Source: Fimbriosthenelais zetlandica (lineage: Eukaryota). From it: 64,000 nucleotides of DNA. Location: the NCBI GenBank assembly GCA_977030845.1, contig OZ365111.1, positions 13,764,001 to 13,828,000 of the forward strand. Reading direction: 5' to 3'. Of the stretch, positions 3,001 through 63,553 are shown piece by piece (positions within the stretch are counted from its first letter, which is position 1; every line of letters begins with the position of its first letter). The position numbers were made by a program, and so were the translations under genes. A model generated the notes under the pieces. The model was not told the origin of the DNA. It worked only from the letters and a program-made list of their open reading frames with translations, and did not search any database.

Positions 3001-6000
3001 CATCTATACTCCATGTGTTAATATGGGACATGCCTGTGAGAGATATCAACTTCAAAGGAAACATCCAAGTACTCCAAACATGATAATATTATGAATGCTT
3101 GAGCAAGGACCATTTTACTCCTCTTTGTTTTTTTCTCACATCCAACATTCTGCGAACCTGATATTTCCCATATTTATGGAAAAATTAAAACATAAATACG
3201 TGTATCAAAATAAATACAACTTAGAGATAACCCTCCTGCTTATCACATTATTTGATATGATTGTATTATCTAAATCACTATTAATAGATTCAATTTTCTA
3301 TTATGAAACCAGCTGGTAAAACCATCAACACTCTGTCGCCAGCTCGTACAGTTAAGTGCGTTCCAACGGTCCGAAATAATTTAATATGGACTATTTTTTT
3401 AATTGATTCATTTCCATTGAGCAAACAATATCATTGACATTTCATAACTGACAGTTAAATAATGTAAACACGAAATTTTGACCTGAAAGGGGTTTAAGGC
3501 TCTTGTAATAACATTTCAAGACCACCTGGTCCATGCACCTGGCTTTACGGTTGGCATTCCTCATTTTACTTCCATTTTCAATGTAAGACAATTTTTCATT
3601 GACATTTTTCATTCAGCATCAATTCTTGATTGCCAATTGTAACAATTATTAAATTTTGAGAGCATTCATAATGGAACTTGTAAATGCAACATCATGGCTA
3701 ATGAATTCTTTTATTTCAAAAAGGTAAATTAGGTTTGGCTAAGATTTATCACCATGCATTCAATTTTACTCTCCTTCATTAATGGTGACTACATAGAAAT
3801 ATTTAAAAAGAAAAATAACTATTTATTTTATTAATTTAAGTCATCAAGGATGCCAACAATTAATTCCCTTATAATTTATAGATCACAAGGATATGACCCC
3901 TTCTAATAAAGCATTATATAACAGCCCAGTGGGGATCCGCTTTGTGCGATCCCCCTTTGTTTGGAACTATTATAGTAACAATAGTGCTCCCCCATAAATA
4001 TAGTGGACGGACTAATTTGCATGGGCCATAACTTATGCTGGTGACATGGCCTAACATGTTAAATGTTCATGTCAAACAAGATCAAAGCATTCGGCAGCTT
4101 CCTAACCACTTTGATGGGATGGGTCGGTCAGGGGGAACCTTATCTTCCCATGACGGGGCAGGTATTTGCTTAAAGCCCGACTATAACAACCTTATTAGCT
4201 TTGTCTCTACAGGTCAGATTGGTCACTGGGTCGGGTCAAGGAGCTGTGGGGTCAAGGGTGGTTCCAGTTAAAATTGGACGAAATCTTCATTTCATATAGG
4301 CTACAGATTCTGAATTCAAAATGCAACCATGCGACGATGCATAGGCCTAATTGAGGTAACTGTACTGAAATTTAATTAAATTTTATAATTTGGACGATGA
4401 TCAAAGGTCATTCATATAAGATTAAATGGTCACTTTTAGGAATAATTAATGTGGGCCTATATTATATAGTTTAGGTCCGTTGAACTCCTGCTCTTTCGAA
4501 TCAACATAAGAAAGGACGCTGGGACTGCTCTGCATGGAAGGAATAAAATGTATCACATTCACCCACATGCACTGATTGAATTCAGGGAAGAAAGAACATG
4601 ACCAAATACAATTTACAGACATAGCTACCTCCCCAATCCGTCAGTCTTCAGACTGAAATCCAATTTTATGACCCAAGGTAGGATAGGGGTCCATTCACGA
4701 ACATGGAAACCCCAAACCTATCAAGGTCACACTGGACAAGGCATTATTTGTCAACCCAACATACTGCATGGAAAGGAAGAAATTTCTTGAAATCTTGAAG
4801 AACTTCATATTCGAACAGAATAAAGAATGTATTTTTTTTAGTATGGGAGGGAGGGGCGGGTGGCAGAGGTGTGAGAGAAAAGAGAAAGAGACCAGGGAGA
4901 GAGAGAACAGATTGAGGATTGTGGCAGGTCGCCATATCAGCCACGTGTGCGTGTATTGGCGCCTGTTATCACCATTTGGAGCCCTGCTCTGCTCTCTCTT
5001 ATCTATTGAGGGCCGCATTCCTAGAGGTGTGGCGAGTCGCTCAAGGTGTTGCCCAGCAGAAACTCGAGCAACTCGATCCCCATTATGAGCAACTCCTGCT
5101 GTCAGGTGCGGATCGGTCAGCTGGCCATGGGGTGGGGGTTGTGGGGAGGGACGAGGGGATATTCAGACAGAAGGCATTGTATGGGTGAATGAATGGGTGA
5201 ATTCGTACCAGTATGAGATGCAAAGTATAACCCAAAAGTGTTTTGGTTTGGAACTTTTTCTTTAGGAAAATGTAGCAAAAATTCAGAAATAATTTGTCAT
5301 GGTCCATGGAAATATCCATTTTAAGTTAAAAGTCACTAAAAAATTTACCCCAATATCATGAATAATGACTTTTCCCTCCGATCATTGTTGTGGGCGTGGG
5401 TGGTGGGTAGGGGGGTTAGGTAGGTGGGGATGAAGAATGCACTAGCAATGGGGGAAATGGGAATAACTGCTGGCTGCTTTTGATGTTAACCCATACAAAC
5501 ATTTTTTCTTCCAGACTAGGGGGACTCGTACGCAGCATATCCACAGTTATCTGACAACCTCCCACCACATAAAATATCACCTGTGATACACCTGGCCATC
5601 AAATCACACCTCTGTATCATATATATCTAAGATTGCCACAAGTGTGTTTACTTTTCATTAGTCAGTAACACTGCAAAGAAAGCCACTAAAGTTAAGTGTA
5701 TTGCTCGATCTATGCATATAGTGTTTAGCGTTTCCATCTGTACTTGAATGATGGACTCGTACTTGATGACATAGCATAATTAGCTAAAGATAGTTAACCT
5801 AATTGCATCATCTCCATAGGTGGGTTTCCATTTTTTGGTATATAGGCCTAACAAGTTCCGTTATTTTACGAAATCCATCTTCAGTTTATTCGCAAATAAT
5901 TTCCGATATTCCTTACCTGGTAATAAACTGATCCTTACATTGTAATAAACTGATCTATATAGGCCTATTTTTGCCAAGCTTTTATAAACTTTCTAAGTAC

Positions 6001-6899
6001 ATTTTGTGCAAGTAAAAGATTGGTGTTACATGTATACGGTTTCACATATATCACAACAACCTTTAAGGAAGACAGAACAAAGGGACAACTAACGTACATA
6101 CATAGAGACATGTATATATATGTTCAGTAGCATCTATACTGAGGAATGATCCCTAACGCCCGAGCCTTACAAGCTATTCCAAGCACATGCTGGTTGCTCA
6201 TTTGCAACTGAATTCCTTGATTTCGGCGGAATTCCTCAGGCGCTCTGTGGACGCCACTTCAAAGGGACAGGATGAAGGGACCATTGGTCCGATTAGGCAT
6301 GCGTAGTTGGTTGGGAGAAAGGCAGGCCCCCGCGTGCGAGGCTTGTGCCCGTCCAACTACTTTTTCTCTTCAACTATCTCATATTTTGGTATTATATGAT
6401 TTGTATAAAAGTGGGGGCAGAGTGAGATCATGATGGAATATATTCACTTGAAAACAAATGATCGAACAAATTATAATCTTACTTACAAAATAATGATTGA
6501 AAAACTATCTATGAACTTTTTCCGTTACAAAAGCAATGATTTATGGTTAAAAGCTTATTTTACAAAGTAATCCAGAAGAGAAATTCCGAAATTTTAATAT
6601 AAATAATATTATAGATATTTACCTCTAGGAAATAAGGTTTTCACTTCACGAGTTAAAAATCAGATACGTTTTATATTGTTTATGATGATCTAATTCTCTC
6701 CAGACAACCCCCATGTTGTGGTCCACAATATTATATTTCACAGATCTAAGCCCATACCATTTCCCTGATCTTTGTTAGATCCTGTTCCTTCTGGGACCCA
6801 TCACAAATCCAAGAGCCCAAAATAGCCCTGTGGGGGCCAGCCCTAATACAAGCCATCTCGCCATAGACACACAAACACACTCATACCCACTTAGCACCG

Positions 6900-10650: not shown

Positions 10651-13600
10651 GTGCCTAAAGGCTCAAATTCACCACTGGTGCATTTATCCTTGTGACAAAA
10701 GCGTCGCTTTGTCGCACTTGTGTCGCAAAGAAAATCGCACCCAGTGGATAACAGCCTTTATCATCGCACCGCCTGACTCTCTGGAGGGTGTGTGTGCCTT
10801 CCACACATTTCTTTTATGTCACATCCACCAGTTTTGAACTTCCTCTGTGTCCCCCTCTATCTATTCAATGCTGGATAAGTTAGGTGGTTTACTGAGAAAG
10901 AGGAAACAGTTTCAAGGAAACAATTCCAACCATCAAGGTTAGGTACACTCCATGTGTACTATGATATAGGGGTCAAAGATAGGTGAGAGGAAGGTGAAAG
11001 ACTGAGAGAAAAGACAGAGATGGATGGATGATTATGAATATATTGTTTTTGTTATTTCACGAGGCAGTTTTCAATTTTTCATTTACACGCCTCTCCCCAT
11101 ATGCAGACAGTGGACTGGCCTTTGATACATCCCAGTTAGCAGCACTGGTTGGAAAAGAAGAAATTTAAAGAATCTATGGGGAATTGAACCCAGGCTCGCC
11201 CATTCAAATGGAACACTCTAAAGTACAGCCTGAGTAATGATCCTTACCCACGAAATAAAAGACAGAGAAAAAAATGAAACGAAGAATTATATCCTTTTAG
11301 AAATGTTATTTCCACGCAGACATGACAAGTGATAAGGGTATCCATTCAGGTATCAGCATGCTCAGAATCATGGGAAGGCAAATTGCCATGTAACATCAAT
11401 TATGGATGCATGTTCCATGCAGGGAAAGCCTAGACACCCGGGCTGGTTATAATTGTTAGGGCACGAAACTGAAGTTTGAATGCCAACAGAGTTTGTTGTC
11501 CAATAAATGAGAGCATGTAACAAAGTGTGGCAGTCTGTAATAGGGACCATCCACCCTGAAATAACTCTTAAAGTTTAGACAATGGTTAACATAAGCGAGA
11601 ACGATATTTATAGTATGGGAAATTCGTTTCAATTTGAAATAGATCAAATCTGATGATAGAAATCCAGGATTTCCACTTGGGACCCATCTATGGACTTTAA
11701 ATTTTTAATTTGCAGAAGAGACAAATCCGTCTGATTTCCATTGACAATGTCCCACAAGGAAATCATCACTACATCACTTCCCATTGATTTCCCATTCTTC
11801 CAGTGGTGCCAAATCACTGACAATAGCCCCTTCTGGCATCCGGGAAACTTTTAAAACAACAATTTCCCCAGACTGCCCCTGTGGTTTCTGTATACAATGA
11901 TGGGCAGGCTCCTGGGGCAAGGGTAAGTTTTGGAATCCAGCAGGGGAGTTTGTTGTGTTTGGATGGGGCGAGGGCGATCATCGGCAAGGTGACAAGGCTG
12001 CGAACAGCACTCCCGCCAGGCCGGGGGTAACTGAAACCAGCCAGGGGTGACCGGGGTCACACCACTGGATCTTTTTACCCCACCATTCTTACCCCGGATA
12101 GGGGTGCTAGTCACTTTACCCCCTGTTATGGCGGCCATAAAAAATAGTGCGGGACGAATGCATCCATAATAGTGTAACCTTCTGACATGGCCCCTTCTCC
12201 GTTTACCCCCGGTCTTTCCTACTTCTCCATCCGATAAGGCATTAGAGACTTTTTTATTCGCTTGAAATGAATTTATCACGTACAGGTCATGATTATCCTT
12301 AATTATCTCACTTCCTGAGATGTGATCGTACACACATGTTTGCTGGGGATGGTCGTAAAAGAAATGTATCTTTTTAATATTTTTTTTTTGTGCACCAACG
12401 TTTGGAAGTGTGAACTAGTTCAATGATTTCCGGAGCATTTCTACTTGCATAACTAGATCATGCCATGGAAGCATAAATATAAGTCTAATACATTGTTGGA
12501 TGAATAGCGTAAAACATTAAAATATAATTATATAAGTGAATATCTGAATATCTTTTAAAAAAAATCAAAGCCATAACTGAGAGTAACGAAACAAAATATT
12601 GACTAAATTTTAACCAGCTCTATTCCAGCTATCAACGAATATCCCCATTGAGTATTCTCCAATCCATCGGTGGACAGAAAAGATAATGTCTAATATCTAT
12701 GATGAAAGTGGGATCTTTCATCGCCTATAAGTCCCCCTCCTTGCCTTTTACTCCCTCTCTGAGTGCTTTGCGGTGCACAAGTCAGTGGGTCTGGGCTAAC
12801 TCGGTCAGAGCGAGCAGATCAAAGGGACCCGGCCATGACACTGACAAGCTGTGAGCTTCTCATCCCGGCTGATGTGCTCCATACGTGCCTCCCTCCTCCT
12901 CTCATCCACTACAAGAAGGAATGATCCCGCTCTCCGATACCAAGCCACTGATTTCTCTTATACCTTCACCTCAAACCGAGTGCAATTTTCAGGTTTTTAT
13001 AAGCCAGGACCAATAGAAAAACCATTAGGAAAAGATGGATTGAAGGGGTGGGGAGCTGCACAGGAGTATCAAGTGCTCAATTAAATTTATATCATGACAG
13101 TCAACTAGTGATTGGAGAGAGGGGAAAAAGTGTAACATGTTCCAGCTTCTAGCCTTGGAACGGTATCACAGCATATAGGCCTAAATAATAACATTGCATG
13201 ATCTAGGATTTCGGATTTTGGGGAGAATCAAATCCAACAAATTGATTTGGGGCAAAATCATCTTCAACAAATATTAAATGGACAGAACAGAATGGATAAT
13301 ACTGTTGTCAGGAGGATTTTTTAGTAGACCTAGGGCAACCAATGGTGGTATAGGCCTAATAAATAGGAGTTGAAACCCATTACCAATATGACGAGGGTCA
13401 CAACCCTGGCACTCCCTGGGTCACATACTATCACAAACTGAGTCAAATTTATTTAATTTGTGTACAAACACTGCCATGTTAATGGTCTTATTAGTCCCTG
13501 CTCACAAATCCTAACTTTTTTCTGAATGTGGCAGGCCAGCTGTTGGTGGAGTGGGAGCAGGAATCACTCACCTCCCACTTGCCAGCTGTGCTGGGAGGGG

Positions 13601-14743
13601 GCGCCACCGGTGAGCGACTCGCCGCCACAGGTAGAGAGCTGCTCTCCACATGATGTGGCTAAAGGATCCATGCACAATTAATCTACTGTCATCATAGACC
13701 CCATATATAACCTATAACGTATGGCAATCCAGAGGTGGATCCAGGGGTCGGGGGTGGGTTCATGGTGGTCAGGACCCCCTCCCCTAGCTTTTGGAGAAAG
13801 ACCAAACATACTGGATTTATATATTCGTTTCAGAGTTCACGATTTATCAACTAGAGACAAAATTATCAACAAATTATGAAATGACAGTTGTCAAAGAAAA
13901 AAACTCATTTAGCAAGCTAAAAATACCACATGTAATGAGGTGCTTTCCAAAATCATTTCACGGAACAACGCAATTTGAGCCTCTTAAATGTGTCTGTAAG
14001 CATTTCAGCACAATAAATATTACAGAGGGAAATTCGAAAAATGAGGGAAAGATCGAGGGTAAGGTGAGGTAGGGTGAGTGAAAGAAGGAGCCCAGGGATG
14101 GGGGGAATGGAGAGATGGGAAGGAGGTTCGAGAAAATCTTCATAATCTATCCAAATGTACATTTTAATATTGAGCACTATACCTATCAGTGTATCACATC
14201 TGCCTTAAAGGACCAGGCTAATGAGTGATGGTGGGAGGTTAGGCCTAGGCCTACATGTATACATACTGACCCACAAATGGTGTATAAGTGGCTCCACTGA
14301 TCAAGTGGTAGGGGGGGGGGGGTGATAAAGACGACACCAGTGGTCACTTAGCCTCAAGTGGCCAGTCATTGTGTCCTCCTATACCGGAGGCCCTATTCAT
14401 GACCCAATGACCACCTATAGTGCCCCCATTGTACGGGCCTCATTGAAGCAGATTAAAAACTGGCAAAGCTCTTATGAATGAGATGCTATCGGTGGAGTTT
14501 GTACACACCTTTGGCTAGGTGCACGAGTCAGTAGAGTGTGAAGAAAATGAGTGGTTGGAAGGCGGTCCCTTCACAGGTGACAATGGGGGTCGGGGGTGGG
14601 TGTGTAAAATGGGTGGGTGGGGGCTTATAATATAGGACCACTCACTGTGGGCCTCTTTGATGTATATATATGGGAGACAGGGATTTAGGTGAATCTATCC
14701 ATTGTGGTTTGGGACCTGGTGTCAGACTAGTGGGGGATAAATA

Positions 14744-16519: not shown

Positions 16520-16619
16520 CTTGCAGGTACAAAAATCCTCCGCCTCCGCCACATATTTAGCGAGGTTGTCTATAATCCTAAGTTTTGTGAAGGTAGCGTA
16601 CTCCTAAGCATCACTGGGC

Positions 16620-17300
16620 TAACTAAAGTCTCTCTCGGCCCGCATGCTTCCACCGGGCCAGGTCTCAGTCACGTGGCCCAAGGGGTTTCCCGCTCTCCGC
16701 CAATCACAGGCCGGCGTCTCTCACTCCACGACTTCCACGGCGTCTGGTGGGGATTCCCTAAACTAAGGTTTCCCGCCACAAGAGTGGAGAGCGAAGACAC
16801 ACCTTTCCACGCGGACAGAGCAGTTTTCAAGAGATCAAACTACATTTTGATGCAGCCAAATATAATTAAATCCATATTTTCTTCTGTACAGAAATGGAAA
16901 AAGATTGGATTAGGCCTACATTTACTGATGGTGATTCAAATGCTAGAAAAAGAAATAGGGGCCTATAAGCCTACATAGCCATAGGGCCTAGGCCTATATT
17001 ATTTTACGTCCAGACCTTTGAAAATATAAATAGTTTACTTTTGATATCTACTTTCTTTTCACTGAAAGGCCAGGTTCCTGTTTTCAATAAAATTGTTTGG
17101 TAAACAAAATGTTCGTAGTCCTATTTTTGCCACTGCGTGGAAGGTATGTAAACACATGTCATTTTTCTAGGTCCCATTCCAGGGCCCAGAGCATGCAGGT
17201 CCCTCAGCAGGCCTCTTCCACTCGATTTTCTCCAGTTTGTCGCTTCGTTGAGAAAACCTTCTTTGATCTCCTCCGACCAGGTAAACATCAAAGTGTAACC
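16620..17300 (-). promoter_or_regulatory. Candidate ZNRF3 proximal promoter
   Basis: Locally GC/CpG-richer than its flanks; CACGTG near 16670, CCAAT near 16700, and two TCF-type motifs in opposite orientation (CTTTGATCT 17261-17269, ACATCAAAG 17285-17293). TSS not determinable from sequence. Confidence 0.4.
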
Positions 17301-18019: not shown

Positions 18020-19260
18020 TCTTTTCAAGGGCGTTGATAAATTTCCCAGAGCAGACACGTTGTAACCAAAGTTGAAAGATAGACGAGAACATCACCAGGC
18101 CTGTCGATATCATCCACTCCAGTTTGACCAGTTGCTTCCTAACTCAATTTGCATGCTTCGAGCCGTGGATTCAATGGTGGCCCTGATCACTGGTTGAAAT
18201 CCAATGCCCTCGGGTTAGTCCCAAGGGAAGACCCTGAGTCAGAGCTTCTCTACTGATGTCCCTCCACCCAAGAACCTCAGAGTGGAGTATTCAAAGCAAG
18301 CTGTTGTAATGATTTCTCATTACGAGCTCTCGCCAGTCCCTTCTCTGAAGGCACATGGCCATTCCAAGGCCCTGGTAATGAGGGGTGTGGAAGCCAGGAT
18401 GCGGAAGTGACGTAGAAATGTTCTGACGTGCATGCGCGATAAGGACCTGTTGATGGATGTATAAACTTGTATCCTTGAGAGGAAAGCGATGTAGTTGCAT
18501 TTTATGGGCCATCAAGAAGTTTACAGTAGTCCGTCAGGATAAAATATTGATTTTGATGATTCAGGCCAATGGTATTAAGGCACGAATTATTAACTAGTTA
18601 ATATAGGTTGTCTAAAAAAATCTTATTGTAATTAGGCCTACATTTGGGACTAAAGTTGAGGTCAATGAAATATTGGAAGATACTGTTAATATGTTATGTT
18701 TGAATTCTATTCCAGAGCTAGATTTACGTCATTTCCAGTAGGCCACAAACAATTTACATTACTTGGTGTCCATCATTTTTGCATTACTTTAGATTGACAA
18801 TACTCCACAATAAGTAATTATGATCTGTATGTTTATGCCATTGTAAATCTAACCCATTAAGCAAGGAAAAATTATGAGAAGCTAACATATCGCTAAACCA
18901 AGCGAGAGGACTTTTTAAGTGCTTCTAAAATATTTAGAGGTCTTGGTCTGATAGGGATTTCATGAATGTAGCTATCCTTTCTTCTGCCCATAAACAATGG
19001 CATAGCAGTCAGCAACATGATGGTAATTAAGGCTATTGAGGAAGGAAAGCTTGCAGAGGCAGGGCTCCTCATCCCCAGTGAAGTATTGTCAGGGATCAGG
19101 AGAGAGGGAGACGATCAATGATAGACCGTTAAGCACTGGAGTTGGCTGAACGTTTGTCTTCTGATAGACTTCATTCCTGGCCAATTGCGATGAACTGTTA
19201 CAGTAGATGTTCAGGAGCGGATCTGGGGGAGTAGGGGAAAGGGTGTCAGGGGATAAAGAA
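18020..19260 (-). mobile_element. Decayed DIRS-like reverse transcriptase fragment (relic B)
   Basis: RPLNILEALKK at 18909-18944 (cf. RPILDLSALNK), LKDTSLYIH within ORF 18291-18515 (cf. DLKDAYFHIPIH), and LGW-x4-EK with a 1-nt frameshift near 18245-18275 (cf. LGW.IN.EKS). An AT-rich insertion appears to lie at about 18530-18880. Confidence 0.4.
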
Positions 19261-20899: not shown

Positions 20900-21800
20900 T
20901 TCGGGGCCTTATTGAGCGATAATACAGCATGATCTATAGTCGTCATGGTAACCATAACTATAGGTAACAGCCTCCCTAACAGCCAGCATCAGGTCGTAAA
21001 TATGTCGCCAAAGGCCGCGAAAAGGCCATACAATGTTTCTCATTCTGTCGTCAAGTTCGTGAGCACATTTGTCTTCATTTGCAGCCGACAGTGCCCTTCT
21101 GGACTCTACCACAAGACCAATTGGGACAGAGTGTTCGATGTACAAAGTGAACCTTTGCAGGCAAATTCATAACTATGTACACAGAATTGAATTTGAAATA
21201 TCATAAACATTTTAAGCCACGATACACGATATATAAATGGGAATAGTGCGTTCCCTGATGGTCAACATGAGTGAAGCCAGAGGATTAGGAATATTCCCTA
21301 TACTACTAACTGAAGCCCTGGCGTCGTCCAATGGCGCCAGAGCACCAGGACATTTTCCATATACTTCTGGTCACCAGACTATCCCAGGCCCTCCGGTGAG
21401 AGCCGACCTTCACCCTATAGCATAGAGAGAGGGTAGGCCTATTCATCTCTGTTACATAGAACGGACTTAGGTGAAAGCTAGTTAGGACGTTTGTCAACTT
21501 GGCTTGGCCAAGCTCTCTCTCCCTCTAGCCTGGCCTCGCCTGATGATCAGGATACACGCACAGCAAGGGACAGAATGGAATGGGACCAGGCTCCTATATG
21601 ACCCCCATCAAATCTATATGTTTGTGCTGATAGCTGAAAGTCTGTTTATTAGAGCTGATGTGTCAGGGGCAGGCCCCCAGGAATCTGCCAAGCCAATGTA
21701 TAGTCCATCTGAACACACGCAAAGGTTTTAAGCATGTGGTCCTTTATCTGTATACGTATCTCCAACTGAACACGACTGGGACTAATGGACCGACATACTG
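20900..21800 (-). mobile_element. Decayed DIRS1-like tyrosine recombinase (relic C)
   Basis: ORF 20909-21145 reads ...KCAHELDDRMRNIVWPFRGLWRHIYDLMLAVREAVTYSYGY, aligning by eye to the DIRS1 YR C-terminus RAHEVRA.ATSWA.F.G.S..DI..AA.W.S..TF..FY. Upstream, AWDSLV..IWKM and GRRQG (about 21320-21400) resemble WDL..V / TWKT / ASGRR. Confidence 0.55.
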
Positions 21801-30315: not shown

Positions 30316-31534
30316 CCCCCTCTTGTATAACATCAGCGAGAGGAGGCTGCGAATTTTCGCAGAAAAAAAATTCGCAGGAAAAATCCTGCGAAAATTTCAG
30401 CGAGCCCTCGCTGGCCTGCCAGCGAGCGAAAACGCTTCCTGCGAAAAATGTTGCGAGAGAACTCCAGCGAGGAGTCCTGCGAGTTGAACATCAGCGAGAG
30501 AACATCAGCTGGCATATCACCAGCGAGAGGAGCCTGCGAAAATCTCTGCGAGAAAACCCTGCGAAAATCTCTGCGAGAAAACACTGCGAAAATCTCTGCG
30601 AGAAAACACTGCGAAAATCTCTGCGAGAAAACACTGCAAAAGCAGGGATTTTTGTCCATAGCAACAGCGAAATTGTCCATAGCAACAGCGAAAGCAGGGA
30701 TTTCTGTCCATAGCAACAGCGAAATTATCCATAGCAACTGCGAAATTCGCAGCGTTGAAACGGGTAATCAAAAAAGGTGTATGATTTTCTAGTCAGCCCA
30801 AAACTGACACAACGCCGTAAGAGGAAGGAATATTTATAAGACCTGTCATTCTTTATTAAAAACGGGATTTTAATCTGGCCATTTTATAACCATAGACTAA
30901 CGGTTATGTTTGGATTAGGCTATTTAAAATTGAAGCTGAGGCCACACCCCTCTTCTCAGCTTGTCCCTATGTAAATCAGCCTAGGCCTACAAGATTAGAT
31001 AACTTAATTATCTGATTAACAAAAGAGTGTTGCGTCAGGCGTGGTAGATAGTAGGAAGGATAGATTAGATAGAGGGGAACTGAGATTAGGCTACCCAGGA
31101 CTCGGTGAGTAAATCAGTAACCACGTAACAAAGGGAACTGTCCTACCGTTTTTTATATAGGGCGGGAACCTAGGGAGAGGTTACTGGTCCCAGCGCGAAA
31201 ATTCGCTGTAGCTATGGAAACAGCGAGCGGAGGCTGTGAATTTTCTCCTCTCGCTGCAGCGAGAGCAGGCTGCGAATTTTCTCCTCTCGCTGCAGCGAGA
31301 GCAAGCTGCGAATTTTCTCCTCTCGCTGCAGCGAGAGCAGGCTGCGAATTTTCGCAGCCCACCGCTCGCAGCGTCTACTCGCTGAGGGACGTCTCGTTAA
31401 CTCCAGCGATGCGAGGGATGTTATGCAAGCGGGAGTCAGCGAGGGCTCGCTGGACTTTTCGCAGGACTTGTGCTGCGAGAGATTTTTCTGCGAAAATTCG
31501 CAGCCTCCTCTCGCTGATGTTATACTACAGGGGG
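30316..31534. mobile_element. 1.2-kb non-autonomous foldback-type DNA transposon with long TIRs and subterminal repeat arrays
   Basis: Perfect 43-bp inverted repeat GTATAACATCAGCGAGAGGAGGCTGCGAATTTTCGCAGAAAAA (from 30325; partner ends 31525), extended after a 3-bp mismatch by CCCCCT/AGGGGG; ATT on both sides (30313-15, 31535-37). Internal 25-bp x4 array (30534-30638), TCCATAGCAAC x4 (about 30655-30740), 36-bp x3 array (31232-31339). Confidence 0.85.
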
Positions 31535-33637: not shown

Positions 33638-33671
<34 letters not shown>

Positions 33672-51375: not shown

Positions 51376-54300
51376 AGTTTGAGGACCTTGTCCTTCCCCC
51401 CGCTAGCCACTCGTTGACCATCAGGACTCCAGTCTACAGCAAACACCTCGTCAGCGTGGCCGGGCAGGTCGTGCAGGAGTTTCTTAGTTTGTATGTCCCA
51501 CACCTTGAGAGTGGAGTCCGCGCTGCCACTACATAATAGACGACTGTCAGCCGACCAGGCTACCTGATAACACTGCTGAACGTGGCCTCTCAACGACGCT
51601 ATGTATCTAAAAGAAAGAGAAAAGAAATTAATATAAATTATTTTTAAAATTTAAAGTAATTTCTCAGAATAAACCGATTTTGATTAGGTAAATATACCTG
51701 GGAAAAAGATAGATGTGAGCTAAATATAATCCAAGATGAACCGACCGGTAATATCTTGAGTCACTCAAGCCATATTCTTACATATATGCTATGTAAGAAT
51801 ATGAACCATGAATTAACATTGAGATTCTTCATAAGGATGTGAATAACAGAGCAAAACCATCGTAAAGAAGAGAAATCTTGCTTAATTAATCTTGAAAAAA
51901 TAGTTCAACAACTATGTACAATTGGAATATGTCTTGTAGGTATAGGATATTGAGTTCTTTTACCCGGCAATTACTTATGGATTTGAAAATCGATTTCCCA
52001 TGGATTTATTTATAATATTTGATAATATACTTACTTTCCAGTGCGGCCATCCCATATTTTGACAGATTTATCAAAGGAAGCGCTGGCCAGGAGTCTGGCA
52101 TCGGGAGAGAAGAGGACCTCGTTGATGAGCTGGGAGTGTCCAGTCATCCTGGCTACGGGTTTCTTATCATTCTCAGGCGTCCATAGAATCAAGGTGAAGT
52201 CGTCAGACCCCGAAACCAGGCGCTCAACGTCATTCTTCTGATCATAAAAACATCAACAATTTTATTGAAAATTTCGAATGGAATAACAGAGAGAAGATTA
52301 AGTATCTAAAATTAGTAAAATCTGACATTAGGATATACGACAGAGCTATAACAGCTATATTTAAACTTTGGTTATGAATTAGATCTGGATTCATAGATTC
52401 ATTCAAAAAGACACCTCATCTGTCTGGTCTGACTGAGGAAAGCACTCCATACATGTTCGATCCACTAATCTAATAGAAAATAATTAGAATGGAGAGGAAA
52501 AGAATAACAAACCTTGGTAGAGTCATATCTTCCTTTTGCCTTCATCTGAAGTTCATCAGCTGAAAAATTCATGATTATTTAATAATGACGTTGAAGTATT
52601 TTTCAAATAATGCTCTTGACAAATGAAAAAATTATTTATATAAATGGCTCAATTAAAACTAAAAGGCATAGTACATCGATGAAAAGTTCTTACGTGTGTC
52701 AGTAACATCTTTGTAAACGATGGATGCCTTGGCTGGATCGAAAGCACCAGTTCTCATAACATAGTCTGTACTTAGAGCTAATGTATTAATCCAATGACCA
52801 TGGCCTTGTAGTGTACGACATAGCATTCCCTAAAGACAGAGGAAGAGACTCAAATTAAACTTGAACCGAAATAATCACCGACTGATTCAGATTATATGTA
52901 CAATGACTTTCAAATCAAAGAACGAATCCTATCCGAGAAAATTGGAACGGCTGGATTTATGTCTCATTTTTCTTTTTAAAAACTTGTTCAGTAAAATCAT
53001 TGTATTGTTTTCTACGATATTTCAAGAACTGTCATAATAAGAAAGAAGCTTACATCGTCAGCTTTCCACACTTTGATGGTCCGGTCCTGTGAGCCTGTAT
53101 ATAGGAGGTTTGTACCTCCCCATTTGATACAAGTCACAGACTGTAAATGTCCAGACAAAACTATTTTACATTGTCCTAAGACTGTGTCCCATATCCTAAC
53201 TGTTGCGTCCTGAAAGAAAACAAAGTTCATGAGATACATTCAACTATGAATAGTGGATATTTAATTACGCAAAGAATATTTTCTATTCCAAAATAAATAA
53301 ATATATTGCGGTTCAATGATTTACTTACTTTTGAAGAGCTTGCTAGTAACCTTGACTCTCCATCTCTGCAGAAGAAATAAGAGATCCATTAGGAAAACAC
53401 AGTTAAAGGCAACAGATTTCCCTGAAAAATTATATCGAATTAGTTTGATTCATAAATTATTTCTGTGTATACTTACAAATGTAGGGGTTTCCAAGCTAAA
53501 GCTGTTATCCATTGTGTATGCCCTGTCAATGTTTTACCTAATTGCTTTCCTGTGCTCGGATCCCAGATACAGATCTAGGAGAGAATGCCACAATATAAGT
53601 CTTGAAAATAGTGTATAGATTTTTGATACTTTGGACAAAAAATATTTTAATAGCGCAGAAAATATCATTATTAGGCCTAGACTCATTCAACACTCACTTG
53701 ACTCTTTTTACATCCAGAAGCTAATTTTTGACCATTTGGAGACCAGGCGATACAGAGAACCCAATGCTGGTGTCCTACAAAGAAAAGAAGCCAATTTGTC
53801 CCAGAAGTTAAACATAATAAAACCATGAGTGAATTGTGCTTATAATAGGCAACATATGAAGCCCACCTTTGCATGTAAACTGTGGAGTTTCCGTGTTCAC
53901 ATCCCAAAACCGAACTGTTGTATCTCCAGATCCGCTAGCCAAATACCTAGAAAAAAATTTAGCCAGTGGTTCGGTTAAAGCGTTTCAACCATAGTGAGAG
54001 TGAAAAGGAGATTCTAAATTGCATCGATATTTTTCCTATGGTACCTAGCATGCCTAGTATCACTGATACACTGGGCGAATATTGAAATTGAAATTTGAAT
54101 GCTACACTATCATACATAGGCTTCAAGGACTGTGACATACCTTCCATCTGGACTGAATGCCACTGATATAACTGCCTCTGCGTGGCCCTCTATTGTACTC
54201 GTACATCTAGTAACAGCTCTCACTTTGAACACAGCTTGAGGTTGATAGAGAATCTCCAAAACATCTTCAGATCCTTCAAGGATCTTTGGATCCAGACTCT

Positions 54301-54748
54301 TGGCAAGGGTTTCAGTAATCTCAGCCTCATTGACAAAGAAGGAATAGGGCGTACTTTCCTCCTGAAAATTTACGGGAAAATCTCTTAAACTTAAACCTTG
54401 AACTTGTTGAACTAAAGTGGACCGGAGAACAAAAATTCGAAAAATATTTTTTAAATTTAGGTCTACTGTGTCTAGTGTAGGCATGTTAGTTACTGTGGGC
54501 ATGTATGATCCCACATAATATTGAAATATAAAATACATGTAGGCCTATAAGAACTTGACTCTCGGACACCAATAACATTTAGTTAAAAGACTTACATTTT
54601 GTAATAAAGCGTTGCAAACAAGCTGCAATTTTTCAGCAGTTATATCAACAGGCAAATCAAACGGAGCTCCAGTTGTTTCACCAGATTCCGATTTAAATAC
54701 ACACAACAATCTCTTGTCGGTTTTCCCGGGTTCCTCAGTATTCTCCAT
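51376..54748 (-). CDS. NLE1: Notchless protein homolog 1 (Rsa4; NLE/UBL domain + WD40 repeats; pre-60S assembly factor)
   Basis: Exons 54748-54596, 54361-54141, 53946-53867, 53774-53698, 53574-53477, 53365-53329, 53209-53054, 52829-52694, 52559-52513, 52237-52035, 51606-51376. All are GT-AG with consistent phases, total 1439 nt (479 codons + 2 nt). Diagnostic peptides: [88 protein letters not shown]. Untranslated exon donor at 55011 (GTGAGT). The terminal few codons were not located. Confidence 0.96.
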
Positions 54749-55010: not shown

Positions 55011-55200
55011 TCTGTTCCTATGGGAGAGAAAATAACTTGGAATTTCTGGAGCAAGCTTCTTTCACACGTGCGGCTGCATTAATTCCTCTACAATCCGCTA
55101 GTCGCTGAACTGGCAGCACTTTCCGGTGTCCAACCGGAAGTCAATTTTTAGCCACTTCCGACAAGCATTGGGCTTGTGTGTCCTTGAAGTAAGTAATATT
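55011..55200. promoter_or_regulatory. Bidirectional promoter shared by NLE1 and MRPL18
   Basis: Start codons are 452 bp apart and divergent. ETS/GABP-type motifs ACTTTCCGG 55118-26, CCGGAAGT 55134-41, ACTTCCG 55154-60; E-box CACGTG 55065-70. Confidence 0.7.
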
Positions 55201-58200
55201 ATGGCTTTACGATTGATCCCCAAGGTTTTCCCAACAACGCTGTCTACAGTTTCACACTTCAGTGCATCCAGAGCCTCCAGAGTCCATGGTGCTTTTATTA
55301 CAGGTAAGATTTTATAAATAAATTCGTGCACATTTAAACCGGCGTGGGCGATAATTGATGAATCGGGCTATTAATATTATCGGTAGGCATCAAAATAGGA
55401 CTTCATTCTCCCTTACATTCTTTCAGTATGGCGAGGGACATATAGGCATAGTTCAACAACAGCTGACGATTCAAGGGAAGTGTCAAAAGTGAATAACGAT
55501 GTTGTTAATCCCGAGTTCATAAATAGGAACCCAAGGTAAGCATTTCCTGTTTTTTTTTATTTGCCAGTTTTAGTTTTGCCCATGCTAATACTATTGCTAA
55601 TACTATTCTAATTAATGAATTAATGAATATCCATGGGATAGGCTTGCTAGATAACCACTGATAAGTAGGCATGGGACTTAACTCTAGATCCATTAATTAG
55701 AATTAGCACAAAACATAAATATAACAATGTACTATAAATTTATTGCAGAAACCTGGAAAGAATGGGTATCGCGAGGAAATCCAAGGGCTGGATGTTTCAG
55801 TATCCATCTAAAGCTTTTTACCACAGGTAGGATAACTGATTCCCTTCTATTTAATTACGATAAACTAAATAAATTCTCATTATTCTACAATAGCTGAAAT
55901 ATAAAAATAATATGATATCAGTACGCCTGGGAATAACAGGCTAAAATTCAGGATATTAATTCTGATCAGATTTAAGAGCGCCATTTGCATTTGCAATTAT
56001 GGCCGCCTGAGAACAAACTCTTTACGGTACCAGGACATTTTGGAAAAAGTGAGAAAATCAGGACATTTAGAAAAATGCATAAACGACCAAGATGCTACAG
56101 CTACGCACAATACTAGGCCTTATGCCTACTTAGTACCGTACTATCGGTATTATTTTTATGTCCTTAGATTAAGATTTGAATCCACTAATCGGCACACCAT
56201 GGGATGGGTCGAACATTGTTCTGGACGAACTGTTGTTATTGCTTCAACCAACGAGTTCTCCATTGGCAAACACCTCTATAGGTAAGTTTTCACTATCTTC
56301 ATCATTTAGACATTCTTTATTGATCATATTTTTTTGGATTAACGTATATTGTCAGATCATCTGAATATGCGTTTAGTGCAATGGAGCACGCCCGTGTCTC
56401 CATGGCTATATCACGGGGAGAGGGAGTCATAGTAACTCTAGTGACGTCATGGCGCGTCATTCCAACGCTCTCCGCCTAACTCACACACCGCACTAGAGTT
56501 GGAGAAAAACTTTTTATTGGTTTTTAATAGTTTTTCATCGTCCGAATATGGGCAAAAGAAAGGAAAGGCTTTGTGCGAAGTGTGGCGTACGTCACCCCAA
56601 ACCTACGGGGACCAAATGTACTCGAAATGCGGAGTTTGATCCAGTTTTGGACGCGGATAATCCCAGGTTCACCACCCAGCCTGAGGATTCGGAATCGGTC
56701 GTCTCATTAGGAACTGAGTGTGACGAGAAAGAAGTGGAAGACGGGGGGAAAGAGAAGCGTATGGAGAAGCGATTTGAGACTTTGGAATTATTGGTGCAGA
56801 AAATATCCAAAGTGGTTCTTGAAGATAAAAAGGGGTTACCAGATAGGCCTACGTCAAGTGACTCGTCGCGCAGCTCCAGCCACTCCACCGTCCGACGTTC
56901 CCGTAGGCATAGCCATACTAGGTCTAGAGCTAGGCCTACTCATCATAGATCTCACTCTACCAGCCGCTCTTCTTCTCGTTCCCGTTCAAAGTCAAGATCA
57001 AGGAAAGATAGGAGGAGAAGAAAATACTTCTCACAATCCAGACATCTTGACAGAGGTGAGCAAATCAGCTCTTTCGAACAGTTAATGGTGGCAACTTTTA
57101 AAACTATTCGTGACATGCACGAAGATGGCAAGGCGATTGATGGTATGATTAGTCACGGGCTCACGTTGGCAGAAAAAGCTGCCACAGCCTCATATATGGA
57201 TCGTGCTTTTGTTAGCTACGATGCGGCTGTTAGAAAGAGGGCATCGACCGTCGGATCATCTGCTTTCGGCCAGCCTAACAATGAAGATGTGATCAAATAC
57301 TTCTCGTATGATAACTCCCGTAAAGCATCAGCGTCAGAGAGGGGGATGTCAGAGAAGGGGAAAGCTGCCAACCACAAGAGTTTTAGAACATGTTTTAGGT
57401 TTAATTCTGAAGCCGGGTGTCATGCAAAGCATTGTGTTTATACTCATAGGTGTAGCGGTTGTAAATCAGATGGTCATAGCGTAAAAGATTGCAAAGTGGA
57501 CAAATCCAAAAGCAAATAGGATTCGGCCTGTGAGGGGGAAGTTGGTTGCCTTGCAATCAGGGACCCGGATAAGGTTATGAACTGGTCCCCGGCTTCTCAA
57601 GATGGTTCTCTTGAGGTCCCGTGTGTCGAGGAAACTCCCAGCCCTTCACAGCCTCCACTTTGCATGATCCCGGTAAATGACACTACTGGTAATTGCTTGG
57701 ATAACTTGTTAGTCAGCAAAGAAATTGATGTTAGTTTAGGTAGTGGGTTAACTCCGGAATTTGCCCTTTCTGTACCCGGTATTCATCAAGTTGATGTTGA
57801 CGTTGACACGGTATTATTTACTACTGATGTTTCGCCCGCTGGCGCTTGTATTACTGTTTATAAGGCTTGTGCTCTTGGAATTTGTAAATGTGCATTTAGC
57901 CTAGACGGCATTGTAAGTCAGTTGAAACCTTGTCGCTTTGCGTATTTATTGTATGGTTGTATTAATGATCCATGTTTGCACATAGACATGTTTACTGGCA
58001 TAGTCGATGGTTTTAAGGTTGTTGATACTGATAGTGTTGTTACTGTTAGGGGTTATGACCAGCCCAACTACAAATCAATCTTATCTAATGACAACAAAGG
58101 AAAAATGAGTAAGATTGTTAGCAAGGAGCTAAATGAAGGTTTCATATCTATCAGTGACTCTAAACCGAGATGCATTCACTCACTGGGTGCAGTTCCAAAA

Positions 58201-60809: not shown

Positions 60810-61613
60810 CATTTCATTTTTCAACTTTAGATTATACATTGTATGTAGCCTAGGTACTGTATGTGAAACAATAAAGGAAATTACTTGAAATATGGATCCG
60901 ACTTCTTTCGACGTTTTCTAATTTGCCGCCTGAACGTAAGGAATATTTTATTTTGAATTTTTTTTTAACTTCCTTTCTATCCAGGCCGCACACACGTCCT
61001 GCCTTTCTATCCAGCAATTTTTTTAGATGAGATTTAGATCTATAGATAACCTATCATAGCATAGACATATTTCCCTTTCTATGTGGTATCTATGTATGTC
61101 TATGCTAGTATGATCAGGCTCGGACGTATTAGCAAAGATAGGCCTACTAATACCGGATAATAAAAGTTGACCGTCCGGTATCGCCCTCGTGACCTATACG
61201 GCAAACGAAGGAACTAAGATTTTTAATCACTTTCGGCTCCATGCGACTACCCAACCACCGGCAACTTGGGGAACGAACGCTCAATGCTAACTCAATGTAG
61301 CCTGACATCCAAGCCTCACGAGGTCCACAGACACAAACAGAACAGTTCTATGGACAGGTTTATGAAACCACCCACATGAACCAAACTTGAAATCCGTCGG
61401 TAGATTTTCATAAAGCAACAGTGGTATGCAGCTCGGAATGTTCAGACGATGTTTGTAGATTTATAGAACCACCTACATGAACCAAAATTGAAATCCTTCG
61501 GTATAGATTTCCATAAAGGATTTATTGCATCCAAAAGAACTGAGCTATTCTGGCTGTAAGCTTATACAAACAGCGAAAGATAAATACCATTAGTATCGTT
61601 GTTATTTAGCCTA

Positions 61614-61877
61614 GCCTACGCCACCATCGGACAGTGAAGAAACTAACTAAATGAGTAAAAGTTACAACCCCACTAGCCGTTGCAACGGACCAAGATGGCC
61701 GCCTACGCCACCATCGGACAGTGAAGAAACTAACTAAATGGGTAAAAGTAACAAACCCACTAGCCGTTGCAACGGACCAAGATGACCGGCTACGCCACCA
61801 TCGGACAGTGAAGAAACTAACTAAATGGGTAAAAGTTACAAACCCACTAGCCGTTGCAACGGTCCAAGATGGCCGCC
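61614..61877. repeat. 87-bp tandem repeat, 3 copies
   Basis: Units start at 61614, 61701, 61788 and differ by a few substitutions; each contains the palindrome CCGTTGCAACGG and CAAGATG(G/A)CCG. Confidence 0.96.
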
Positions 61878-63553
61878 GTTACACTAGCCAAACCCAAAAT
61901 GTAATTTAAAGCTAAAACATACAATGATGTCGTTTTAGAATACAGTTATTAACTTGAAAAAATATCAACACAAATCTGTTGTGTAGCGTGAAACCGATAA
62001 CCAGAAAGACGATAAGTAAACGAGCTGAAACGGAGCTAGGCGGAATCCGTATTTTGTCTCAATCAATGTTTACAATCACTATTATCGCCCAGCAGCTGTG
62101 GAACCACAGCAGAAGTATTTTTCCATGAATATCTTGGTTGCATGAAGGTAATTAAGCGATATATCCCTACACAGTTTGTATTTATAACTGCCAGGCACCG
62201 TGAATGTTGATTTTAGGTAGATTTGTTTCGTGGAAACTTGGGAAGGTTACTTTCTGGTGTTGCACAACGGCAAATGCAAATGCCGATCCCAATGGCAATG
62301 GTCATTATGGTGGCAATGGTAATGCAGTGCCAATGGGCTAATGGCAATGCCAATATTAGTGTATTGCCAGTTCCAATGTATTTGCCACGTGTGGGCCAAG
62401 GCCCTAGCCTAGGCATTGACCTTTACCGACTTTAGGTCTAGATTCTATGGCTTTTAAATTGTACCCGGTAATATCGGTAGGCTTATCAATTTCTAACATC
62501 TGAAAATATGAGGTGTTTAATTATTATTGCAATTTACAATAGGGCTATATATTAAGACCATACTCATAGAACTATATCTCCTATTGTTCTATGAGGAGAT
62601 GGTGAAATGCTGGCTGTAGATTTAAAAAAATATCAGATCTGAAATTAATTTTATTCGAGGGGCAGGCTTCAAAATTGATTTGTAGACTACAGTCTACTGG
62701 TAGCGGGTACTTTGTTCAGCATTCAGCATTGTGAAACTAGGCAATCGTAGTTCACGAATTTGAATTTTATCAATTGTGTAAAAACATAAAAAAATGTTTA
62801 TTATCTTTGGAACACTGGCATATTCTTATTATAGCTAGCCTATCTATAGGCAGGGGCTATGATGGGCCCTTTCTATATCTAGTACTAGGTACCGGTATAT
62901 CCCATTAATAATATTACCAGGTACCGATAAAGGTCAAACACTGGCATGTAGGTGTTTTGAAACCTGGCAGGTACCGGTACTTTAGGCCTATAGCCTGACT
63001 CTGCCCTATAAATTTATATTGAGATAAAAAGACTCCGATTGATTGATCTCGTTTAGTTAAACTTGTACCTGGAACCAGAGCTAGCATAGTGTGTGAGCTT
63101 AAATATCACGGGGAGATTTCATTTATCGCAAGCTGTATAGTACCAGAGTAGCCTATAGTCTTTTGTCGCCAATTTCTTCAGAGAGGTTTGTAATTTCTAT
63201 GGTATCCAATCACTACAAGCTATACAAGGACATGAGTTACCGTAATTTTGTATCTGAAAAAAGGGCCAGTAGCAGCAGAGAGACTACAATCGAGCAGTTA
63301 CACCTTAGACCTATTATAGACTAAAACTAACGGGATATTTTTCTCACTACATTTCACCACCTCGCCATAATATTATATCAAATCTGTAAAGTTTTGTAAT
63401 ATCAAACCATTTCACATAGAATTAGCTTCTATAATATGCAAGATTGTAAACATGCAAGTTGCCTCCTCAGTTGGCTTTGAGTACCATATTCAAAACTTTA
63501 AAAAATATTAATAATAATGATTATTTTATGTTATTTTTATTTACAGAAAAATC

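What the first reader, a model, noticed from the sequence alone, without database searches (positions are those of the whole stretch)
4342..62990. About 25-fold excess of the palindrome TAGGCCTA, grading into TAGGCCTACATGTA: a possible motif-writing mutational or repair process
Seen: TAGGCCTA at 4342, 5843, 5960, 13176, 13351, 14240, 14246, 16911, 16989, 18633, 21434, 23986, 30982, 33448, 33675, 41611, 43275, 53672, 54540, 56844, 56931, 61139 and 62983 (23 by eye, about 1 expected from base composition). Five extend to TAGGCCTACAT or its complement, including TAGGCCTAGGCCTACATGTA (14240-14259) and TACATGTAGGCCTA (54534-54547), as if cut from a (TAGGCCTACATG)n template. TACATGTA alone occurs about 9 times versus about 2 expected. 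The flanks are unrelated, and copies lie in introns, spacers and inside unrelated transposons (DIRS relic, both large MITEs). Two copies are in frame within gag. Inference: these are not a transposon's body or a gene-specific binding site, but short sequences repeatedly inserted, for example by an RT or polymerase writing a fixed template at DNA breaks, or left as hairpin-resolved excision footprints.
Basis: partly seen in the sequence, partly recalled or inferred. Interest (0 to 1): 0.75.

Follow-up and report, generated by a model that had tools for sequence, protein, structure and literature searches.

The report
Transposon excision scars at TA sites
The eight-letter palindrome TAGGCCTA is about 20 times too common across this invertebrate genome because six letters were slipped in at TA sites about 100,000 times, most likely as scars of a cut-and-paste jumping gene that I could not find.

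Summary
TAGGCCTA occurs 23 times in the window against 0.8 expected, and 113,146 times in the 447-Mb genome, about 20 times the number base composition gives. It is a property of the whole genome, not of this window.

Where a diverged second copy of the surrounding DNA exists, that copy has a plain TA. The motif copy has exactly 6 more bases (TA to TA-GGCC-TA), or 12 for the doublet.

Among all 256 words built as XY + 4-base palindrome + XY, the four most enriched all have XY = TA: cores GGCC, CATG, CCGG and GATC. This matches a duplicated TA target plus a few retained end bases, the known scar of Tc1/mariner-type excision.

Composites such as TAGGCCTACATGTA are only 3-7 times more frequent than independent stacking on neighbouring TAs predicts. 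No (TAGGCCTACATG)n template is needed.

The scars decay like neutral DNA. Some ride inside younger repeats: window sites 33448, 56844 and 56931 are shared by copies of their repeat elsewhere.

A TA-flanked miniature element with CCG...CGG ends exists and could account for the CCGG scars. No parent with GG(C) ends was found.

The read-based test for polymorphism could not be run. Earlier notes of this scan on other DNA of the same genome reached the same reading. It is a striking instance of a known mechanism.

The parts
4342..4349 (.). TAGGCCTA scar, unique-sequence context
   Evidence: exact match; flanks
5843..5850 (.). TAGGCCTA scar (TA-TAGGCCTA)
5960..5967 (.). TAGGCCTA scar, 117 bp from the previous one; TACATGTA at 6027
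13176..13183 (.). TAGGCCTA scar
13351..13358 (.). TAGGCCTA scar (TA-TA-GGCC-TA)
14240..14259 (.). Stack of three scars sharing TAs: TA-GGCC-TA-GGCC-TA-CATG-TA. Holds the TAGGCCTA sites at 14240 and 14246 and TACATGTA at 14252.
16911..16918 (.). TAGGCCTA scar
16955..16996 (.). Chain of degenerate TA-delimited modules (TA-GGGGCC-TA-TA-AGCC-TA-CA-TA-GCCA-TA-GGGCC-TA-GGCC-TA), ending in the intact TAGGCCTA at 16989
18633..18640 (.). TAGGCCTA scar
21434..21441 (.). TAGGCCTA scar
23986..23993 (.). TAGGCCTA scar
30982..30989 (.). TAGGCCTA inside a 1.2-kb element with 99-nt inverted ends (30315-31535)
33448..33455 (.). TAGGCCTA carried as a passenger in a young, high-copy 1.1-kb repeat (33236-34336)
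   Evidence: All 84 genome copies matching its flanks carry the 6-bp form and none the empty form. 40 scored copies are 94-99% identical.
33675..33682 (.). TAGGCCTA in the same 1.1-kb repeat, next to a (CT)n run; sharing by other copies not tested
41611..41618 (.). TAGGCCTA scar
43275..43282 (.). TAGGCCTA scar followed by CATG
53672..53679 (.). TAGGCCTA scar
54534..54547 (.). Stack TA-CATG-TA-GGCC-TA
56844..56851 (.). TAGGCCTA in frame in the ORF upstream of RT; shared by 99-100% identical copies elsewhere
56904..56938 (.). In-frame chain of six mostly degenerate 6-bp modules (TAGGCA TAGCCA TAC TAGGTC TAGAGC TAGGCC TA), ending in the intact site at 56931
   Evidence: shared by a 100% identical copy on another chromosome
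61139..61146 (.). TAGGCCTA scar
62983..62990 (.). TAGGCCTA followed by TAGCC; TACCGGTA at 62890 and 62972 nearby
1956..1963 (.). TACATGTA, the second scar class. The others not listed above are at 6027, 8779, 16202, 19813, 20449, 23567 and 46963.
62890..62897 (.). TACCGGTA, the third scar class (also at 62972). TAGATCTA is at 10053, 29898, 49257 and 61035.

Best explanation
TAGGCCTA is the scar left when a TA-targeting cut-and-paste DNA transposon of the IS630/Tc1/mariner kind leaves a site.

Insertion duplicates the target TA. Excision by staggered cuts leaves the element's outermost bases on both flanks. End joining then seals the break as TA + GGCC + TA, a net gain of 6 bp.

The inferred ends of the parent are GG(C)...(G)CC. 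Sister scars TACATGTA, TACCGGTA and TAGATCTA would come from other families with CA(T), CC(G) and GA(T) ends.

The favoured geometry is a 3-base 3' overhang, as in mariner and Sleeping Beauty. Overhangs whose first and third bases pair give 7-mers: TA-G[G/C]C-TA, TA-C[C/G]G-TA and TA-C[A/T]G-TA. Overhangs whose last two bases are self-complementary give the 8-mers.

Each scar offers two TAs, so later insertion and excision cycles stack further 5-6 bp modules. This yields TAGGCCTAGGCCTA, TAGGCCTACATGTA and longer degenerate chains.

Scars are not removed and decay neutrally, so about 10^5 have accumulated while the element itself is rare or gone. Scars that landed in other mobile elements were then copied with them.

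Shown here: the enrichment, the TA frame, the +6/+12 bp insertion at TA, the stacking statistics, the neutral decay and the passenger copies. Inferred: that a transposon is the agent, its end sequence, and the overhang length.
For: Enrichment:
- 23 sites against 0.8 expected in the window.
- 113,146 sites genome-wide.
- It is the top non-simple 8-mer in a 264-kb sample of six chromosomes, with 61 sites against 4.3 expected.

TA frame:
- In a scan of all 256 words XY + 4-base palindrome + XY, the four best all have XY = TA (z = 37, 24, 15, 9). The next best has z = 7.
- The GGCC core is enriched only between TAs. ATGGCCAT has 18 counts against 19 expected.

Insertion at TA:
- Second-copy alignments show exact gaps. 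L004:1733 against L019 reads GTTG-TAGGCC-TACAAG versus GTTG------TACAAG. L004:1795-1808 shows +12 bp (alignment A2).
- L024:6303, L024:5125, L024:5261 and L018:1787 behave the same way.
- 4 of 6 best second copies have an exact 6- or 12-base gap, against 1 of 120 control TANNNNTA sites. Fisher p = 7e-6.

Flanking preference:
- The flanks read T-R | motif | Y-A, like the palindromic AT-rich targets of Tc1/mariner. ZB prefers a palindromic AT repeat (PMC7913693).
- The same paper states that Tc1/mariner footprints are 2-4 bp.

Overhang model:
- TAGSCTA 85 against 26 expected, TACSGTA 30 against 9.7, TACWGTA 59 against 38.
- TACATTA, TAGGTA and TAGGCGCCTA are not enriched.

A parent for one class:
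- A miniature element TA|CCGTATTTGCCGG...CCGGCAAATACGG|TA has homology starting exactly at the TA (alignment A1).
- It has 461 exact ends genome-wide, many paired 100-260 bp apart.

Stacking:
- 2,800 doublets against about 380 expected from independent hits.
- 1,581 mixed pairs against about 480 expected.

Neutral decay:
- The excess of one-mismatch derivatives is 0.9 times the excess of intact sites. They are mostly transitions, implying about 10% mean divergence.

Transposases:
- 21 DDE_3 matches genome-wide, four of them in open frames of 480-537 aa.
Against: - No TA-flanked element with GG(C)...(G)CC ends was found in 276 kb. A family of more than about 5,000 copies would have shown up.
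- The two candidates I followed (L018:567-1680 and GGCTGATTGTAT) failed on inspection.
- No filled/empty/scar allelic series was seen.
- The insertion evidence comes from only 6 events at 3 loci of my sample, none of them in the window.
- For TACATGTA, TACCGGTA and the 7-mers I found no second-copy pair showing an insertion.
- Chains of 5-7 degenerate modules (16955-16996, 56904-56938) are far more frequent than independent hits predict. Strong local re-targeting or slippage must be added.
- Many genome-wide TACCGGTA sites lie in satellites.
Confidence: 0.7

Rival explanations
1. One reading: a reverse transcriptase or polymerase writes pieces of a fixed (TAGGCCTACATG)n template into DNA breaks.
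For: The 20-mer TAGGCCTACATGTAGGCCTA occurs 33 times genome-wide. One of these (L001) continues into a second CATG unit. Long chains of modules exist in the window.
Against: - Only 1.4% of TAGGCCTA sites adjoin CATGTA, 3.3 times the independent-hit expectation.
- Single units dominate: 2,800 doublets against 113,146 sites.
- Every unit is framed by a duplicated TA, and four different cores share that frame. A single template does not explain this.
- The two motifs are not regionally associated.
Confidence: 0.04
2. TAGGCCTA is the seed or remnant of a hexanucleotide microsatellite (TAGGCC)n that grows and shrinks by replication slippage.
For: - Doublets are about 7 times more frequent than independent hits predict.
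- Runs of 4 units exist at C1:6984749-6984774.
- Degenerate 5-7 unit chains lie in the window, and there is a 1.6-kb field of TAGGCTA-like modules in L024.
Against: - About 97.5% of sites are single units.
- The word is enriched in one phase only: TAGGCCTA has 61 sites against 8 for GCCTAGGC.
- Slippage cannot create the first unit from a bare TA, yet the second-copy comparisons show exactly that.
- Three other cores share the TA frame.
- Slippage may still lengthen chains once they exist.
Confidence: 0.06
3. TAGGCCTA is a functional palindromic binding site, for a transcription factor or insulator, kept by selection. Earlier scan notes report crowding near promoters.
For: It is a perfect palindrome. 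Earlier notes of this scan report sections around gene starts. Same-motif sites cluster within 100-300 bp.
Against: - It arises as an insertion, not by point mutation.
- Its one-mismatch derivatives show neutral, transition-biased decay.
- G+C content and CpG observed/expected within 250 bp do not differ from those around random TA sites.
- Sites lie inside retroelement ORFs and other repeats.
- Later co-option of some sites is not excluded.
Confidence: 0.05
4. The scars come from a TA-duplicating element outside Tc1/mariner. One candidate is an undescribed branch of the PIF/Harbinger-ISL2EU-Spy (PHIS) superfamily, whose ends usually start with GG. Another is a host nuclease derived from such an element.
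For: - PHIS inverted ends usually begin with GG (PMC4482050).
- Sailor ends, by contrast, usually begin GT or CC (PMC8533490).
- No GG-ended Tc1/mariner-like element was seen here, and DDE_3 transposases are few.
Against: - The six described PHIS groups use TWA, AT, none, ANT, CWG or TNA targets, not TA.
- The ISL2EU-type scar ATGGCCAT is not enriched.
- No PHIS element was examined in this genome.
Confidence: 0.15

Closest known systems
Tc1/mariner excision footprints (Tc1/Tc3, Sleeping Beauty, Minos, ZB)
   Same: There is a duplicated TA on both sides of a few bases that come from the element's ends. The footprint core is 2-4 bp (PMC7913693), giving net insertions of 5-6 bp. The target context is palindromic and AT-rich. 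From my own knowledge, not checked here: Sleeping Beauty leaves TAC(A/T)GTA and Minos leaves a 6-bp footprint.
   Different: - The parent of the main scar is unknown.
- Its inferred GG(C) ends are unusual for the family.
- The scale is large: about 113,000 copies make it the top 8-mer of the genome.
- Stacking into multi-module chains was not found described in my literature searches.
PIF/Harbinger-ISL2EU-Spy (PHIS) superfamily
   Same: The terminal repeats usually begin with GG, and the targets are short and AT-rich (PMC4482050).
   Different: None of the described groups duplicates TA. The ISL2EU-type word ATGGCCAT is not enriched here.
Sailor (DD82E) elements
   Same: - It is a TA-type target family present in annelids and molluscs, and its ends often start with CC (PMC8533490).
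- The CCG-ended miniature element here has TATA on its left flank in both copies.
- An earlier scan note reports a Sailor-type transposase fragment in this genome.
   Different: It could explain the CCGG scars at most, not the GGCC scars. The link between the miniature element and Sailor is untested.
P-element, hAT or RAG-type footprints
   Same: These too are short palindromic remnants at excision sites. An earlier scan note reports P-like scars in this genome.
   Different: They sit in 7-8 bp duplications, or consist of nucleotides copied from the variable flank. Here the core is fixed and the duplication is TA.

Membership tests
Tc1/mariner-type excision footprint | The scar is flanked on both sides by the duplicated TA target, and the empty site is a single TA | tested here: met
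   Exact +6 or +12 bp at a TA in 6 events. Only TA-framed words are enriched among the 256 XY-palindrome-XY words.
Tc1/mariner-type excision footprint | A core of 2-4 bp between the TAs | tested here: met
   Cores are 4 bp (GGCC, CATG, CCGG, GATC) and 3 bp (GSC, CSG, CWG). The 2-4 bp range is stated in PMC7913693.
Tc1/mariner-type excision footprint | The core equals the terminal bases of an element present in the genome | tested here: inconclusive
   Met for CCGG: the TA|CCG...CGG|TA miniature element. Not met for GGCC: no TA|GG(C) element in 276 kb. The whole genome could not be scanned.
Tc1/mariner-type excision footprint | An allelic or paralogous series of empty, filled and scarred sites | not testable with these tools
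Tc1/mariner-type excision footprint | A matching transposase is encoded in the genome | tested here: inconclusive
   21 DDE_3 matches, four in 480-537 aa open frames. Their ends could not be read.
Hexanucleotide microsatellite (TAGGCC)n | Arrays of several units dominate, and all phases of the unit are equally enriched | tested here: not met
   2,800 doublets among 113,146 sites. TAGGCCTA has 61 sites against 8 for GCCTAGGC.
ISL2EU / PHIS footprint | The duplicated target is AT (A|AT|T) or TWA | tested here: not met
   ATGGCCAT has 18 counts against 19 expected. The gaps are 6 bp, not 7.
One dispersed repeat consensus | Sites share extended flanking sequence | tested here: not met
   There is no information beyond 2 bases either side, and no second copies among the window sites. 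A minority are passengers in repeats.

The most novel reading that the evidence does not exclude
The GGCC scars may not come from an ordinary resident transposon family at all. They could come from an undescribed TA-duplicating agent that leaves almost no copies of itself. Candidates are a new PHIS-like or other superfamily with GGC ends, a repeatedly invading and vanishing element, or a host-domesticated nuclease that cuts at TA and preferentially re-targets its own scars. Such an agent would write a cumulative, datable log of DNA breaks into the genome.
Probability: 0.12. Interest if true: 0.8.

Novelty: new member of a known kind. Interest (0 to 1): 0.45.

Why it matters
If the reading holds, about 0.7 Mb of this genome consists of readable scars that record more than 100,000 past transposon excisions. 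The record includes the order of events in stacked chains, and the ages of scars can be estimated from their decay.

That gives a rare way to measure cut-and-paste traffic, target choice and local hopping over evolutionary time. Copy counts cannot show this, because such elements do not multiply when they move.

It also matters for annotation. The scars add 6 bp, so they can persist in frame inside coding sequence, as in the ORF at 56548-57519. They also dominate k-mer statistics and could be mistaken for regulatory motifs.

Identifying the missing GG(C)-ended parent could reveal a very active transposase.

Tried and rejected
Searches for the parent element:
- A scan for TA-flanked inverted ends first gave 126 'CA' pairs. 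These turned out to be two inverted arrays of a 36-bp satellite in L005, and they vanished under stricter settings.
- TAGGTGATAC looked like an end but is a 27-bp satellite in L022.
- TA|GGTGCC...GGCACC|TA in L018 looked like a GG-ended element. Its inverted homology runs 23 bp beyond the TA, so TA|GG is internal.
- GGCTGATTGTAT has no inverted partner.
- An all-against-all BLAST for insertions within second copies gave nothing useful.
- The large ORFs of the sample are retroelement genes only.
- The two inverted-repeat elements of the window have other ends: ATTCCCCCT for one, and sub-terminal GGAGAGTTGAGCC repeats for the other.

Tests on the window's own sites:
- The gag-like ORF has no detectable homologues.
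- Neither retroelement ORF is on record elsewhere.
- Length differences among copies of the 1.1-kb repeat are blurred by a (CT)n run. I therefore used a flank pattern with a 0-6 base gap instead.

Tests on the sister motifs:
- Second-copy tests for TACATGTA, TACCGGTA, TAGATCTA and the 7-mers were uninformative in 276 kb.

Tests that could not be run:
I did not try to read further letters through N-rich patterns.

Other:
- Literature searches for the motif as a genomic phenomenon found nothing.

Full report
**1. Observation**

All 23 TAGGCCTA coordinates are exact. Dinucleotide-preserving shuffles give a mean of 0.80 and a maximum of 3. TACATGTA occurs 10 times against 1.24 expected.

Counting both strands, TAGGCCTA has 46 counts against 1.7-2.6 expected under Markov orders 0-3, 4.3 under order 4 and 13 under order 5. 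It is by far the most enriched 8-mer of the window, with z = 24.6 against 8.2 for the runner-up, which is TACATGTA. 23 of the window's 34 AGGCCT hexamers carry the T...A frame, so the unit really is the 8-mer.

The flanks are unrelated.

**2. It is a property of the genome**

The window is C11:13764001-13828000 of a 447.1-Mb assembly in 79 contigs. Earlier notes of this scan call it a spiralian, marine-worm-type animal.

Genome-wide counts are:

| Word | Sites |
|---|---|
| TAGGCCTA | 113,146 (one per 3.95 kb; about 5,800 expected at 40% G+C) |
| TACATGTA | 71,537 |
| TACCGGTA | 18,503 (many in satellites) |
| TAGGCCTAGGCCTA | 2,800 |
| TAGGCCTACATGTA | 1,581 (both orientations) |
| TAGGCCTACATGTAGGCCTA | 33 |

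In a 264-kb sample (the window plus twenty 10-kb stretches from six chromosomes), and leaving simple repeats aside, the three most enriched 8-mers are:
- TAGGCCTA, 61 sites against 4.3 expected
- TACATGTA, 61 against 8.8
- TACCGGTA, 15 against 1.4

TAGATCTA follows with 16 against 3.6.

**3. The shared grammar**

I scanned all 256 words of the form XY + 4-base palindrome + XY. The four best all have XY = TA, with z = 37, 24, 15 and 9. The fifth has z = 7. The GGCC core is enriched between TAs only, and ATGGCCAT has 18 counts against 19 expected. So the signal is a duplicated TA around a short core, not GGCC as such.

**4. It is an insertion at TA**

I compared motif sites with diverged second copies inside the sample.
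- L004:1733 against L019 reads GGTGTTG-TAGGCC-TACAAGAAAATCG versus GGTGTTG------TACAAGAAAATCG.
- 60 bp further on, the doublet in L004 is +12 bp against a TA in L019 (alignment A2).
- L024:6303, L024:5125, L024:5261 and L018:1787 show the same pattern.
- Taking the best second copy per site, 4 of 6 show an exact 6- or 12-base gap. Among control TANNNNTA sites the figure is 1 of 120, Fisher p = 7e-6.

None of these events is in the window itself. Its sites are either in single-copy DNA or shared by other copies of their repeat (section 7).

**5. Mechanism**

TA to TA-NNNN-TA is what a TA-targeting cut-and-paste element leaves behind. Insertion duplicates the TA. Staggered excision leaves terminal bases on both flanks, and end joining seals them. 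Tc1/mariner footprints of 2-4 bp are the stated norm (PMC7913693).

The flanking preference T-R | scar | Y-A fits the palindromic AT-rich targets of that family.

The minor forms discriminate between cut geometries:
- Enriched: TAGSCTA (85 against 26 expected), TACSGTA (30 against 9.7) and TACWGTA (59 against 38).
- Not enriched: TACATTA (68 against 71), TAGGTA (115 against 108) and TAGGCGCCTA (0).

A 3-base 3' overhang x1x2x3 explains this pattern. If x1 pairs with x3 (as in GGC, CCG and CAG), the overhangs anneal with a central mismatch and give 7-mers. If x2x3 is self-complementary (as in GGC, CCG, CAT and GAT), two-base microhomology plus fill-in gives the 8-mers. This step is inference. 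Two-base or four-base staggers also give the 8-mers, but not the 7-mers.

**6. Parents**

For the CCGG class a parent type exists. It is a miniature element of about 150-230 bp, TA|CCGTATTTGCCGG...CCGGCAAATACGG|TA. Its homology between copies starts exactly at the TA (L006:4105-4269 and L023:1054-1238; alignment A1). It has 461 exact ends genome-wide, many in facing pairs 100-260 bp apart. Sailor elements, which occur in annelids, often have ends starting CC (PMC8533490).

For GGCC no parent was found. A family of more than about 5,000 copies would have appeared in 276 kb.

Tc1-type DDE_3 domains are few. There are 21 matches, four of them in open frames of 480-537 aa. Few parents and many scars is what cut-and-paste predicts, but the identity of the agent remains open. 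PHIS elements usually start with GG but use other targets (PMC4482050).

**7. Composites, clustering, decay and passengers**

*Composites.* With about 33.5 million TAs (7.5% of positions), independent hits predict about 380 GGCC doublets and about 480 mixed GGCC/CATG pairs. The observed numbers are 2,800 and 1,581, which is 7 and 3.3 times more. So the 'grading into TAGGCCTACATGTA' is stacking on shared TAs, and no 12-base template is needed.

*Clustering.* Same-motif sites cluster: 10 pairs lie within 100 bp against 1.8 expected. TAGGCCTA and TACATGTA associate only when abutting. This pattern looks like family-specific local hopping rather than general hot regions.

*Long chains.* The window holds two longer degenerate chains, at 16955-16996 and 56904-56938. 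These are too frequent for independent hits, so strong re-targeting of scars or slippage must contribute. This part is unexplained.

*Decay.* The excess of one-mismatch derivatives is 0.9 times the excess of intact sites, and transitions dominate. TACCGGTA decays to TACTGGTA and TACCAGTA, as expected of a methylated CpG. The implied mean divergence is about 10%, with no sign of constraint. G+C content and CpG observed/expected around sites equal those around random TAs.

*Passengers.* Site 33448 lies in a young 1.1-kb repeat, with 478 candidate copies and 40 scored copies at 94-99% identity. All 84 copies matching its flanks carry the 6-bp form: 81 intact and 3 with one substitution. None has the empty form. 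For the gag-like ORF, a 601-bp stretch holding both sites has a 100% identical copy on C10. Two 99% copies cover only its first 289-297 bp, and so only site 56844. Hence some of the 113,146 sites were multiplied by other mobile elements after the scar was made.

**8. Limits**

Literature searches found no description of this motif as a genomic phenomenon.

Earlier notes of this scan on other windows of the same genome reached the same reading and also failed to find the parent. I treated them as leads only.

**9. Verdict**

The best explanation is excision scars of a TA-target cut-and-paste transposon, confidence 0.7. It is a striking, large-scale instance of a known mechanism with the main agent unidentified. 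Interest 0.45.

Noticed in passing
window 33236-34336: A young, high-copy 1.1-kb non-coding repeat with several sub-terminal GGAGAGTTGAGCC motifs at both ends. There are 478 candidate copies, and 40 scored copies are 94-99% identical. Its true ends lie outside the stretch I queried.
   Followed up: partly
window 56548-60145: A retroelement with an intact 323-aa ORF with no detectable homologues, followed by a 661-aa RT/RNase H ORF. A 601-bp stretch of the first ORF is 100% identical to C10:15458513-15459113, which suggests very recent activity.
   Followed up: partly
L006:4105-4269 and L023:1054-1238: A TA-flanked miniature element with CCGTATTTGCCGG ends. It has 461 exact ends genome-wide. 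Of the first 100 listed, all on C1, most lie between 3 and 17 Mb. It may derive from a Sailor element.
   Followed up: partly
L024:4980-6600: A 1.6-kb field built almost wholly of degenerate modules such as ATAGGCTAGCCTAT and TAGGCTA, interrupted by about 400 bp of other sequence. It could be a satellite born from stacked scars. Its origin is unclear.
   Followed up: partly
L005:560-1060 and L005:4590-4880: Two arrays of a 36-bp satellite (CACCCTTCACTATACAGTAGCTCACATAAGTGAGTA) in inverted orientation, about 3.5 kb apart.
   Followed up: no
L022:300-800: A 27-bp satellite (GGTGATACWTGGTCTGCCTTTTGTTTA) lying inside a 966-codon open frame that has no Pfam match.
   Followed up: no
G000:C1:152134-152661, 268955-269566 and 308720-309371: TACCGGTA recurs at 40-bp and 20-21-bp periods, so it sits inside satellites. 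This inflates its genome-wide count.
   Followed up: no
G000:C1:1220631-1340060: The doublet TAGGCCTAGGCCTA recurs eight times at a spacing of about 17 kb, which points to a tandem array of 17-kb units.
   Followed up: no
window 30315-31535: A 1.2-kb element with 99-nt inverted ends (89% complementary) that start near ATTCCCCCT and are rich in CTGCGAAA/TTTCGCAG repeats. It carries the TAGGCCTA at 30982.
   Followed up: partly
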